Origin: Diadema antillarum
Lineage: Eukaryota
Reading direction: 5' to 3'
Assembly (NCBI RefSeq): GCF_040938485.1
Contig: NW_027271690.1
Location: 1,860,001-1,924,000 of the forward strand
Length of the DNA: 64,000 nucleotides
This document shows positions 1 through 523 of the stretch, piece by piece. How positions within the stretch are numbered: the first letter of the stretch is position 1; each line of letters starts with the position of its first letter. The position numbers were made by a program, and so were the translations under genes. Under the pieces are notes generated by a model, which did not search any database, was not told where the DNA came from, and saw only the letters and a program-made list of their open reading frames with translations.

Positions 1-41
1 TGCAGGGAATGCATTAATAGCCAATCTTGATTTAATGAATA

Positions 42-79
42 ATCCGAATTTTCGAGGATCCTTACTCTTCTTCAGGGAT
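42..79 (-). ncRNA. Second minimal hammerhead ribozyme copy, inverted
   Basis: Reverse complement of the 251-288 motif with one change in stem II (GAGT instead of GAGG, leaving 3 bp). Confidence 0.65.
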
Positions 80-172
80 GACAGTGTATCAAGAGTAAAA
101 CATTAGGAGTCAAATAAAAACACCGCAGGAGCCAAAAAAAAAAAAAGTTGGCTCTTGCCAAATATATGTGTA

Positions 173-228
<56 letters not shown>

Positions 229-250
229 CATATATATAATTCGCACTGTC

Positions 251-288
251 ATCCCTGAAGAAGAGGAAGGATCCTCGAAAATTCGGAT
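251..288 (+). ncRNA. Minimal type I hammerhead ribozyme (Penelope/retrozyme type)
   Basis: ATCC-CTGAAGA-A-GAGG(AAGGAT)CCTC-GAAA-ATTC-GGAT. Stem I is ATCC/GGAT, the CUGANGA core carries an extra A, stem II has 4 bp, then GAAA, a palindromic AATT stem III and a UUC cleavage triplet (C284). Confidence 0.75.
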
Positions 289-523
289 TATTCATTAAAT
301 CAAGATTGGCTATTAATGCATTCCCTACATTCCTCTGTTGTGACTTTATTATTGCTATTTCTAGTACTGCCAATACGCGGAACAACTACAATGTATATAT
401 ATACATATGTATGTATATACACATATATTTGGCAAGAGCCAACTTTTTTTTTTTGGCTCCTGCGGTGTTTTTATTTGACTCCTAATGTTTTACTCTTGAT
501 ACACACTGTATATTTATTACACA

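What the first reader, a model, noticed from the sequence alone, without database searches (positions are those of the whole stretch)
1..523. Inverted pair of ~260-bp monomers, each carrying a minimal, dimer-dependent hammerhead ribozyme (candidate echinoderm retrozyme)
Seen: 251-288 (+) folds as a type I hammerhead with stem I ATCC/GGAT, core CUGAAGA plus an extra A, stem II GAGG/CCTC, GAAA, an AATT stem III with no loop, and a UUC cleavage site. A second copy is at 42-79 (-). The plus arm is exactly one 260-bp unit bounded by CACTGT, and it is circularly permuted relative to the minus arm, as expected for pieces of a tandem monomer array. No ORF is present. Known: minimal hammerheads with a palindromic stem III that cleave as dimers mark Penelope-like elements and their non-autonomous 170-400-nt non-LTR retrozymes, which can yield circular RNAs. 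Inference: this is a small self-cleaving retroelement family sitting in a (TA)n tract, possibly undescribed in this species. The arms differ (GAGG/GAGT, A13/T11, CCTGCA/CCTACA), which argues against a pure read-duplication artefact, although the locus abuts a gap.
Basis: partly seen in the sequence, partly recalled or inferred. Interest (0 to 1): 0.8.

Follow-up and report, generated by a model that had tools for sequence, protein, structure and literature searches.

The report
Inverted Penelope fragments carrying hammerhead ribozymes
The two inverted arms are 5'-truncated tail ends of an abundant Penelope-like retrotransposon inserted head-to-head in a (TA)n tract, each carrying the minimal hammerhead ribozyme motif typical of such elements, so this is a real but already known kind of feature and not a new circular-RNA "retrozyme".

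Summary
The arms, the CACTGT repeats and both hammerhead motifs (251-288 +, 42-79 -) are in the sequence. The motif is not chance: my descriptor gave 0 hits in 200 simulated windows.

- The hammerhead-bearing part is only 147 nt (244-390). It is the 3' end of an autonomous Penelope-like element (PLE).
- Copies show the PLE signatures: variable 5' truncation, head-to-head inverted pairs, (TA)n targets, and a 32-nt "tail" on only one arm.
There is no tandem array, so the retrozyme reading is not supported.

Four PLE families in this genome carry the same hammerhead about 100-220 nt before their 3' ends. They show compensatory changes in helices I and II, in the palindromic helix III, and at C3-G8/U3-A8. 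All features match the PLE minimal hammerheads of Cervera & de la Pena (2014).

Other first-stage notes of this scan flagged the same architecture elsewhere in this genome. Cleavage and the unique permuted junction at 86/87 remain unverified.

The parts
1..86 (-). Short, tail-less arm: 5'-truncated 3' end of PLE family F1 (unit positions 1-86 here). It continues about 23 nt left of the window to unit position about 109, then meets a (TA)30 tract.
   Evidence: (C802:1859978-1860086 minus, query 1-109).
42..79 (-). Hammerhead motif of the minus arm. It has a G-to-U change that leaves a U.C mismatch at the fourth pair of helix II.
   Evidence: 46.8 bits, mismatch marked. The strict descriptor rejects it.
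84..161 (-). Inverted copy of flank segment A (repeat family 2). It is joined to the minus arm at the CACTGT microhomology (81-86). This junction is unique in the assembly.
   Evidence: No contig bridges 86/87.
162..243 (.). (TA)n microsatellite between the arms, ending in 'aattcg', which is family F1 sequence just 5' of CACTGT.
244..390 (+). Long, tail-bearing arm: the last 147 nt of the 3' UTR of PLE family F1, from CACTGTCATCC to CTACAAT.
   Evidence: (40 scored copies, 95-97% identical).
251..288 (+). Intact PLE-type minimal hammerhead. Helix I is 251-254/285-288, the core 255-261, the bulged A 262, helix II 263-267/272-276, GAA 277-279, palindromic AAUU 280-283. The predicted cleavage is after C284.
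359..390 (+). 32-nt PLE 'tail', present on this arm only.
   Evidence: among 94 copies, 48 end at unit position 147 and 36 at 115; each large inverted pair has one arm reaching 501 and one reaching about 469.
391..428 (.). TA/TG-rich microsatellite. It is the target-site tract at the 3' end of the long arm and is partly shared with the paralogous A locus.
429..523 (+). Flank: a member of repeat family 2, a small palindromic repeat (truncated left arm, T-run, right arm, then TATTTATTACACA...). It runs into the N gap and is not part of the hammerhead element.
   Evidence: depth 170-880 against 3000-50000 for the F1 part.

Best explanation
Window 1-523 is one complex insertion of a canonical Penelope-like retrotransposon (PLE, family 'F1') with a C-terminal endonuclease, sitting in a (TA)n microsatellite.

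Structure. Two 5'-truncated copies of the element's 3' UTR end lie head-to-head. The plus arm (244-390) carries the 32-nt PLE 'tail'. The minus arm (about -22 to 86) lacks it. Each arm carries, in the sense of the element's ORF, the PLE-type minimal type-I hammerhead: a 4-bp helix I, the CUGAAGA core, an unpaired A before G10.1, a 5-bp helix II, GAA, and a loop-less palindromic AAUU in place of helix III.

Shown:
- Family membership.
- The coding partner.
- The truncation, inversion, tail and (TA)n signatures.
- Conservation with compensatory changes of the hammerhead fold across four PLE families.

Inferred from published PLE biochemistry: the RT-EN nicks both strands of the target and primes cDNA at two internal sites near the RNA 3' end. 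This gives inverted copies, of which only one has the tail.

Inferred for the RNA: a single motif cannot form helix III. Two copies must pair AAUU with AAUU to make an active dimer that cuts after C284 (UUC|G). Its role in the PLE life cycle is unknown.

Segment A (429-504, inverted at 84-161) is flanking host repeat DNA. Its permuted inverted copy is most simply a template switch at the 6-nt CACTGT microhomology during or after integration, or else a mis-assembly. It is not evidence of tandem monomers.
For: Family and structure:
- At least 1288 first-look candidates; 40 scored copies are 95-97% identical over 244-428.
- Copies share a fixed 3' end before (TA)n and have variable 5' ends. Most have an inverted partner 2-300 nt away.
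- The longest non-coding version is about 500 nt.
- In L073-L077 the same 500 nt ends 1.7-3 kb head-to-head inverted copies.

Coding partner:
- L076:2695-4959 is an intact 754-aa ORF with Pfam RVT_1 at E 9e-15.
- It contains CDKPRCQICNH followed by VLYCIMCSKCPGVSYIGET...NNHKSSILKH.
- A sub-threshold Pfam GIY-YIG match falls on that stretch (E 0.0095).
- The nearest Atlas clusters carry RVT_1 plus GIY-YIG (score 0.98).
- At least 1614 related ORF candidates exist in the genome.

Tail: 3' ends cluster at unit positions 147 (48 copies) and 115 (36 copies), 32 nt apart, with one of each per pair.

Hammerhead:
- Strict descriptor: 1 hit in the window, 0 in 200 simulations.
- 18 of 24 3' regions downstream of diverged PLE ORFs carry a motif of the same build about 100-120 nt before (TA)n.
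- Across families F1-F4, 98.8% of cells are paired, against 33-47% when the partner columns are slid. 8 of 12 pairs have changes on both sides, including C3-G8 to U3-A8.
- All 150 scored genome hits of the model are significant.

Literature:
- The bulged nucleotide, G10.1-C11.1, the palindromic 15.2-16.2, U3-A8 variants, opposite-strand pairs 100-700 bp apart and truncated PLEs are all described in PMC4209133.
- Inverted 5'-truncated copies, the 30-40-bp tail at one end and the (TA)n bias are in PMC8557442.
- Extension of both strands and two internal RT start sites are in PMC11167929.
Against: - No Rfam hammerhead model matches, even at E<=10. Those models expect a helix III.
- Helix I is only 4 bp and the trans helix III would be four A-U pairs.
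- ViennaRNA prefers an alternative CUGAA/UUCGG pairing by 1.8 kcal/mol.
- A transcript spanning both arms would fold into one long hairpin of -207 kcal/mol.
- Published PLE minimal hammerheads cleave poorly in vitro. Ribozyme mutants did not affect insertion by an Anolis PLE.
- No RNA run was available, so neither transcription nor cleavage was seen.
- F2-F4 were picked with a descriptor that demands pairing, which inflates the pair counts. F4 alone could be chance (0.27 expected in the 670 kb scanned), although it is a repeated family with variable 5' and fixed 3' ends.
- The GIY-YIG Pfam score is below the curated cut-off.
- The RT was not placed in a PLE phylogeny.
Confidence: 0.87

Rival explanations
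1. Non-LTR retrozyme. The locus is two pieces of a tandem array of about 260-nt non-coding monomers, each with a hammerhead. They would be transcribed as multimers, cut by dimeric hammerheads and ligated into about 260-nt circular RNAs.
For: CACTGT lies at both ends of 244-509, and the minus arm shows the A|B junction expected of a permuted or tandem unit. Animal retrozymes are thought to derive from PLE pLTRs (bioRxiv 10.64898/2026.07.22.740005).
Against: - Segment A is missing from 29 other copies. It is its own repeat family with its own continuation and about 10-50-fold lower depth.
- The A|B junction occurs once in 1.75 Gb.
- Among 94 family copies, every second copy nearby is inverted; none is tandem.
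- The family has coding full-length members.
Confidence: 0.04
2. The hammerhead resemblance is a chance motif inside a fold-back, MITE or Helitron-like DNA transposon that targets (TA)n. No ribozyme is involved.
For: The motif is short and Rfam does not detect it. The family forms near-perfect palindromes flanked by microsatellites. This was my own first reading.
Against: - The palindromes are inverted 5'-truncated copies of an RT-encoding element.
- The chance rate of the motif is below 1 in 25 Mb.
- The same build recurs with compensatory changes at the same place in other PLE families that are only 51-60% identical in protein.
Confidence: 0.03
3. The element identification is correct, but the particular arrangement is a mis-assembly next to the gap at 524-709. 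This concerns the inverted copy of A between the arms and the permuted A|CACTGT|B junction. The true locus would be a simpler single arm or an ordinary head-to-head pair.
For: - The locus abuts an N gap and is made of microsatellite plus two high-copy repeats.
- The 86/87 junction is unique in the assembly.
- No contig of four independent runs bridges it. Contigs stop at 86 or start at 87 and continue with the usual family sequences.
- None of about 60 other F1 loci has an inverted flank copy bracketing an arm.
- PLE structures are known to trouble assemblies (PMC8557442).
Against: - The two A copies differ (A13 against T11), as do the arms, so this is not a plain duplicated read.
- The junction uses a 6-nt microhomology, as real template switches do.
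- Short-read contigs break at repeats anyway, so their silence is not evidence.
Confidence: 0.2

Closest known systems
Minimal hammerhead ribozymes of metazoan Penelope-like elements (min-HHR; Cervera & de la Pena 2014, PMC4209133)
   Same: - Type-I topology and a 4-5-bp helix I.
- An unpaired nucleotide between A9 and G10.1, and a conserved G10.1-C11.1 pair.
- No loop 3, with palindromic 15.2-16.2, so a dimer is required.
- U3-A8 core variants in sister families.
- Located in the PLE terminal repeat or 3' region.
- Thousands of dispersed copies, mostly in truncated PLEs, often as two motifs on opposite strands 100-700 bp apart.
   Different: Helix II is 5 bp with a 4-8-nt loop here, against 7-8 bp in Schistosoma and 6 bp in D. 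virilis. The trans helix III would be only AAUU. Activity is untested.
Canonical C-terminal EN+ PLEs with a CX2-5CxxC linker (Neptune/Nematis type; Arkhipova 2006 as cited in Craig et al. 2021, PMC8557442)
   Same: - A single ORF with an RT followed by a Cx4CxxC linker and a GIY-YIG-type motif with a CCHH pattern.
- (TA)n insertion bias.
- Inverted 5'-truncated copy next to the main copy.
- A 30-40-bp tail at one end only.
   Different: The clade was not established by phylogeny here. Only inverted pairs, not direct pLTR tandems, were seen for family F1. Direct tandems were seen for family F3.
Poseidon PLE of Anolis carolinensis, studied in vitro (PMC11167929)
   Same: It provides the mechanism that fits the anatomy here. 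The protein cleaves and extends both target strands. Reverse transcription starts at two adjacent internal sites whose spacing equals the genomic tail. Here the two 3' ends are 32 nt apart.
   Different: In the Anolis element the hammerhead overlaps the ORF start in the pLTR-ORF junction. Here it lies about 106 nt before the 3' end of an about 870-nt 3' UTR. No biochemistry exists for this element.
Animal non-LTR retrozymes (Cervera & de la Pena 2020, PMC7229834)
   Same: Type-I hammerheads that need dimers, and an evolutionary link to PLE terminal repeats.
   Different: Retrozymes are tandem, same-orientation, non-coding 170-400-nt monomers that yield circular RNAs. This locus is an inverted pair of truncated ends of a coding element, and no tandem copies were found.

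Membership tests
Penelope-like element (canonical, C-terminal EN+) | ORF with a reverse-transcriptase domain | tested here: met
   L076:2695-4959 (754 aa, no stops) matches Pfam RVT_1 at E 8.9e-15, 55.4 bits against a cut-off of 29.6. L077 and L073 also match.
Penelope-like element (canonical, C-terminal EN+) | GIY-YIG endonuclease with a CCHH pattern, C-terminal to the RT | tested here: inconclusive
   The motif ...VLYCIMCSKCPGVSYIGETSTKFRMRFNNHKSSILKH... is readable. Pfam GIY-YIG hits that stretch at E 0.0095, 16.7 bits, below the cut-off of 22.6. The nearest Atlas clusters carry GIY-YIG plus RVT_1. No PDB relative was found.
Penelope-like element (canonical, C-terminal EN+) | Heavily 5'-truncated copies arranged as inverted or tandem repeats (pLTR-type structures) | tested here: met
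   The 3' end is constant and the 5' ends vary. Head-to-head partners occur in most of 29 loci. Five 5-9-kb loci are inverted pairs of 1.7-3-kb copies.
Penelope-like element (canonical, C-terminal EN+) | A 30-40-bp 'tail' extension at only one end of the insertion | tested here: met
   The two discrete 3' ends lie 32 nt apart: 48 copies end at position 147 and 36 at 115. Each large pair has one arm reaching 501 and one reaching about 469.
Penelope-like element (canonical, C-terminal EN+) | Microsatellite, often (TA)n, target bias | tested here: met
   (TA)n abuts the 3' end of essentially every copy inspected.
Penelope-like element (canonical, C-terminal EN+) | RT groups with PLE/TERT reverse transcriptases in a phylogeny; clade assignment | not tested
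   No reference PLE proteins were at hand. The Cx4CxxC linker only suggests Neptune/Nematis type.
PLE minimal hammerhead (min-HHR) | Catalytic core CUGANGA ... GAAA and H17, in type-I order | tested here: met
   CUGAAGA at 255-261, GAAA at 277-280, C284.
PLE minimal hammerhead (min-HHR) | Unpaired nucleotide between A9 and G10.1, and a G10.1-C11.1 pair | tested here: met
   A262 is unpaired and G263 pairs with C276. Both features are present in all four families.
PLE minimal hammerhead (min-HHR) | No stable helix III; palindromic 15.2-16.2, so a dimer is required | tested here: met
   AAUU in F1-F3 and AGCU in F4, which is a compensatory change.
PLE minimal hammerhead (min-HHR) | Helices I and II kept by compensatory changes among families | tested here: met
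   98.8% of cells are paired, and 8 of 12 pairs change on both sides. Slid controls give 33-47%. Caveat: the sites were chosen with a descriptor that demands pairing. Position in the 3' UTR of protein-defined PLE copies is the independent support.
PLE minimal hammerhead (min-HHR) | Self-cleavage after H17 | not testable with these tools
   No RNA run holds the sequence, and only contigs were available.
Rfam hammerhead families (Hammerhead_1, _3, _II, HH9, HH10) | Score at or above the family gathering threshold | tested here: not met
   No hammerhead match at gathering score, at E<=10 on 1-523, or on the full element.
Animal non-LTR retrozyme | Tandem, same-orientation 170-400-nt monomers, each with a hammerhead | tested here: not met
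   All neighbouring copies are inverted. The supposed monomer is a chimera of two repeat families. Its junction is unique.
Animal non-LTR retrozyme | Non-coding, non-autonomous family | tested here: not met
   The same 3' end terminates copies with an intact RT/EN ORF.
Animal non-LTR retrozyme | Circular RNA of monomer length | not testable with these tools
   No RNA runs were available.

The most novel reading that the evidence does not exclude
The permuted, inverted copy of 116 nt of flanking host repeat (84-199) is joined to the 5'-truncated end of the minus arm through the 6-nt CACTGT microhomology. This could record a template switch of the Penelope RT from its RNA onto neighbouring host DNA during integration. 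PLE insertion would then be able to duplicate and invert adjacent host sequence. Another first-stage note in this genome, which I did not check, reports a Penelope copy carrying an inverted copy of a host exon.
Probability: 0.25. Interest if true: 0.5.

Novelty: new member of a known kind. Interest (0 to 1): 0.27.

Why it matters
This finding does not change what is known. Minimal, dimer-dependent hammerheads in Penelope-like elements, their dispersal in truncated and inverted copies, and the U3-A8 variants were all described in 2014.

Its value is as a clean, well-documented case:
- It comes from a genome with a very large and apparently young PLE population: intact ORFs, copies 95-99% identical, and 10^4-10^5 rough hammerhead candidates.
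- Four families allow the hammerhead fold to be tested by covariation.
- The two discrete 3' ends, 32 nt apart, mirror the two RT start sites measured in vitro for a lizard PLE.

Such a genome would be a good system for asking what PLE hammerheads are for.

The report also warns that 'monomer' boundaries drawn from a single locus can be chimeras of an element and its flank.

Tried and rejected
- Rfam, at gathering score and at E<=10, on the window, on 1-523 and on a full element: no hammerhead hit, only low-complexity miRNA noise.
- My first reading was a MITE, fold-back or Helitron-like DNA element with a chance motif. I dropped it once the palindromes proved to be inverted truncated copies of an RT-encoding element.
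- Tandem-monomer / retrozyme reading: rejected.
- RNA evidence for cleavage: the look-up of sequencing runs returned only DNA-type runs kept as contigs, so starts and ends could not be read.
- Independent check of the 86/87 junction: no contig bridges it. This says little, because contigs break at repeats.
- Other F1 loci with an inverted flank copy bracketing an arm: none in about 60 loci.
- PDB sequence search with the ORF: no hit.
- Substitutions within F1 copies: 0.99% in the hammerhead against 1.51% in the rest of the unit. The difference is small and uninformative for dead copies.
The covariation test therefore rests on four families only.
- Family F2's copy in L078 and the 3' regions of L080, L082, L088, L089 and L097 showed no intact motif.
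- Masked stretch: loci fetched from the window's own assembly (L001, L031, L032) and a paralogous locus (L033) carry letters where the window reads N (524-709). A script printed part of them by accident. I did not use, compare or reproduce them, and I did not examine the gap.

Full report
**What is in the sequence**

Window 1-523 holds two sets of inverted matches:
- 1-86 against 244-329, 98% complementary.
- 84-199 against 391-504, with 61 nt at 100% and 64 nt at 92%.

A (TA)n tract lies between the arms, and an N gap starts at 524. CACTGT occurs at 244-249 and 504-509.

The plus-strand stretch 251-288 reads AUCC CUGAAGA A GAGGA-AGGA-UCCUC GAA AAUU C GGAU. This is a type-I hammerhead layout: a 4-bp helix I, a canonical core, one unpaired A before helix II, a 5-bp helix II, and a loop-less palindromic AAUU where helix III should be. 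The copy at 42-79(-) has a U.C mismatch in helix II.

**Is the motif more than chance?**

Rfam finds no hammerhead, at gathering score or at E<=10. A descriptor I wrote for this layout finds exactly one site in the 64-kb window and none in 200 first-order Markov simulations of it, which is 25.6 Mb over both strands. A looser descriptor gives 4 hits per 10 Mb.

**What the arms belong to**

Searching the window's own assembly (1.75 Gb) with 244-510 gave at least 1288 first-look candidates. All 40 scored copies were 95-97% identical, but only over 244-428.

In 29 other loci:
- The conserved unit runs from CACTGTCATCC to CTACAAT (147 nt) and is followed directly by (AT)n.
- Segment 429-504 is absent.
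- Most loci have a second, inverted copy 2-300 nt away, head to head, with breakpoints that differ from locus to locus.
- In several loci the similarity continues upstream of CACTGT, so CACTGT is not an element boundary.

**Segment A is a different repeat**

Segment 429-510 has its own roughly 72 candidates. Typically these form a small palindrome around a T-run and continue as T-TATTTATTACACAC.... A paralogous locus has A without the hammerhead unit.

Contigs of four public runs cover 1-86 at summed depths of 3000-50000 but cover 87-145 at only 170-880. They stop at 86 or start at 87, and their loose ends show the usual continuations of each family.

**The coding partner**

The 354 nt upstream of the unit (L027:1147-1500) recur at 97-100% identity, often as two inverted copies about 3 kb apart. 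Five such loci (L073-L077) are head-to-head inverted pairs of 1.7-3-kb copies, each ending in the same 500 nt.

L076:2695-4959 is an uninterrupted 754-aa ORF on the same strand as the hammerhead:
- It matches Pfam RVT_1 at E 9e-15.
- It then reads ...CDKPRCQICNH...VLYCIMCSKCPGVSYIGETSTKFRMRFNNHKSSILKH.... This is a Cx4CxxC linker followed by a GIY-YIG-type motif with a CCHH pattern.
- Pfam GIY-YIG hits that stretch only below threshold (E 0.0095).
- The nearest ESM-Atlas clusters (0.98) combine RVT_1 and GIY-YIG.
- There is no PDB relative.

With this ORF the genome gives at least 1614 candidates. They include families at 58-60% and 51-53% identity with open frames of up to 961 aa, many of them in inverted pairs.

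**Penelope signatures**

Craig et al. 2021 (PMC8557442) describe for PLEs:
- heavy 5' truncation,
- an inverted 5'-truncated copy next to the main copy,
- a 30-40-bp tail often at one end only,
- a (TA)n bias linked to the CX2-5CxxC linker of Neptune/Nematis-type elements.

All four are seen here. Among 94 family copies, the 3' ends fall at unit position 147 (48 copies) or 115 (36 copies), 32 nt apart. Each large pair has one arm reaching 501 and one reaching about 469.

In the window the plus arm has the tail (359-390). The minus arm ends near position 109 against a (TA)30 tract just left of the window.

Frangieh et al. 2024 (PMC11167929) showed for a lizard PLE that the protein cleaves and extends both target strands. 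They also showed that reverse transcription starts at two adjacent internal sites whose spacing equals the tail. That mechanism fits this anatomy. It is inferred here, not shown.

**The hammerhead across families**

I took the 3' regions downstream of 24 diverged PLE ORF hits, chosen by protein match. In 18 of them a motif of the same build lies about 100-120 nt before the 3' (TA)n.

The four versions are:

| Family | Helix I 5' | Core | Bulge | Helix II with loop | | Helix III | H17 | Helix I 3' |
|---|---|---|---|---|---|---|---|---|
| F1 | AUCC | CUGAAGA | a | GAGGA-AGGU-UCCUC | GAA | AAUU | C | GGAU |
| F2 | ACUC | CUGAAGA | a | GGUGG-AUGGAAG-CCACC | GAA | AAUU | U | GAGU |
| F3 | ACAC | UUGAGAA | a | GGGCG-GCGAGA-CGCCC | GAA | AAUU | U | GUGU |
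| F4 | GCCC | UUGAAAA | a | GACCU-GUAUUAGU-AGGUC | GAA | AGCU | U | GGG |

F4 was found in a flank. It is a repeated family with variable 5' and fixed 3' ends.

On the alignment, 98.8% of cells pair, against 33-47% when the partner columns are slid. Eight of 12 pairs show changes on both sides. These include helix III (AAUU to AGCU) and the core pair C3-G8 to U3-A8.

Caveat: the sites were picked with a pairing descriptor, so the counts are inflated. The independent support is that the sites recur at the same place in protein-defined elements, where about 0.01 false hits were expected.

A covariance model of the four families scores the window's arms at 54.4 and 46.8 bits and hits nothing else in the window. 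In the whole genome all 150 scored hits were significant, out of a rough 270,000 first-look candidates.

**Comparison with what is known**

Cervera & de la Pena 2014 (PMC4209133) defined exactly this motif for metazoan PLEs:
- a 4-5-bp helix I,
- a conserved G10.1-C11.1 pair,
- palindromic 15.2-16.2 with no loop 3, hence dimer-dependent,
- U3-A8 variants,
- thousands of dispersed copies in truncated PLEs,
- pairs on opposite strands 100-700 bp apart,
- weak cleavage in vitro.

The present motif differs only in detail: helix II is 5 bp and the trans helix would be AAUU only. It is a new member of a known kind.

It does not meet the definition of a non-LTR retrozyme. There are no tandem same-orientation monomers and the family is not non-coding. 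Circular RNA could not be tested.

**How it most likely works**

Shown: the identity and anatomy of the insertion, and selective maintenance of the hammerhead fold among PLE families.

Inferred:
- The element's RT-EN nicked both strands in (TA)n and primed cDNA at two internal sites, leaving two inverted truncated copies.
- As RNA, a single motif is inactive, because four nucleotides cannot form a hairpin. Two copies must pair AAUU with AAUU to cut after C284.

Points against activity:
- ViennaRNA gives the hammerhead secondary structure -9.2 kcal/mol, against -11.0 for an alternative CUGAA/UUCGG pairing.
- A transcript through both arms would form one -207 kcal/mol hairpin.

Activity would therefore need separate or tandem transcripts, and possibly protein. 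The biological role of PLE hammerheads is unresolved in the literature.

**The permuted junction**

Reading the minus arm in its own sense gives (TA)n - A - CACTGT - unit(1-109). The plus arm gives unit(1-147) - (TA/TG)n - A - CACACTGT - rest of family 2.

A plain inverted duplication cannot give this order. A polymerase copying the element towards its truncated 5' end (CACUGU...) could then switch at the CACTGT microhomology onto the flanking DNA and copy A back to the (TA)n tract. That would give exactly what is seen.

The junction is unique in the assembly and is not bridged by any contig. None of about 60 other loci shows the like. It is either a one-off template switch or rearrangement, or a mis-assembly beside the gap. 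I put the mis-assembly at about 0.2.

**Limits**

- No RNA data were available.
- The organism is coded, so 'echinoderm' is untested.
- PLE clade membership was not tested by phylogeny.
- Letters corresponding to the window's N stretch were present in loci fetched from the assembly. They were printed once by accident and were not used.

**Earlier notes of this scan**

The scan already holds many first-reader notes on hammerhead-armed, (TA)n-targeted fold-backs and Penelope insertions elsewhere in this genome. The first of these turned me from a DNA-transposon reading to the PLE reading, which I then tested myself.

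Noticed in passing
window 21433-21500 (-): A tRNA gene (Rfam tRNA, 55.4 bits). The anticodon loop reads CUAGCAA, so it is probably tRNA-Ala(AGC).
   Followed up: no
window 429-523 and 84-161; loci L034-L042: Repeat family 2 is a small palindromic, MITE-like element. 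It consists of an inverted arm, a T-run, and the arm GGCTCCTGCGGTGTTTTTATTTGACTCC...CTCTTGATA, followed by T-TATTTATTACACACCGACGCAG. It often lies next to (TA)n and has at least 72 candidates in the genome. The window's copy and a paralogue carry an extra CACACTG after CTTGATA.
   Followed up: partly
L079:840-879, L045:138-169 and about 16 other loci; genome-wide hits: PLE family F3 (51-53% protein identity to F1, open frames up to 961 aa) carries a hammerhead with a U3-A8 core (UUGAGAA). It seems to be the most abundant version: most of the 150 scored genome hits share one score of 55.3 bits. Many hits lie as minus/plus pairs 40-170 nt apart.
   Followed up: partly
L027:1147-1500 (F1 3' UTR): The 3' UTR contains a diverged internal direct duplication, about 75% identical with a period of about 250 nt (query 121-344 against the stretch upstream). 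Only the downstream unit carries a hammerhead.
   Followed up: no
L045:34-238: This F3 fold-back has a palindrome centre exactly at the 5' edge of the hammerhead core. The left arm is truncated at U3 and the right arm starts at CAC. F1 copies likewise often start 7-11 nt before helix I (at attcgCACTGT). This suggests a 5'-truncation hot spot just upstream of the ribozyme.
   Followed up: no
L007:2029-2180 (-): Next to the F4 hammerhead element lies another abundant fold-back family (query 149-296). Its opposite strand contains GGTCGAAAGCTTC, which looks like the 3' half of an F4-like hammerhead truncated within the motif.
   Followed up: no
L001, L031, L032 (own assembly) and L033 (G000:C160): Loci cut from the assembly carry letters where the window shows N (524-709). 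L033 is a paralogous copy of the region to the right of the arms.
   Followed up: no
window 255-259 with 282-286: Core nucleotides CUGAA can pair with UUCGG, which spans the cleavage site. This gives an alternative fold 1.8 kcal/mol more stable than the hammerhead secondary structure and is a possible inactive conformer.
   Followed up: partly
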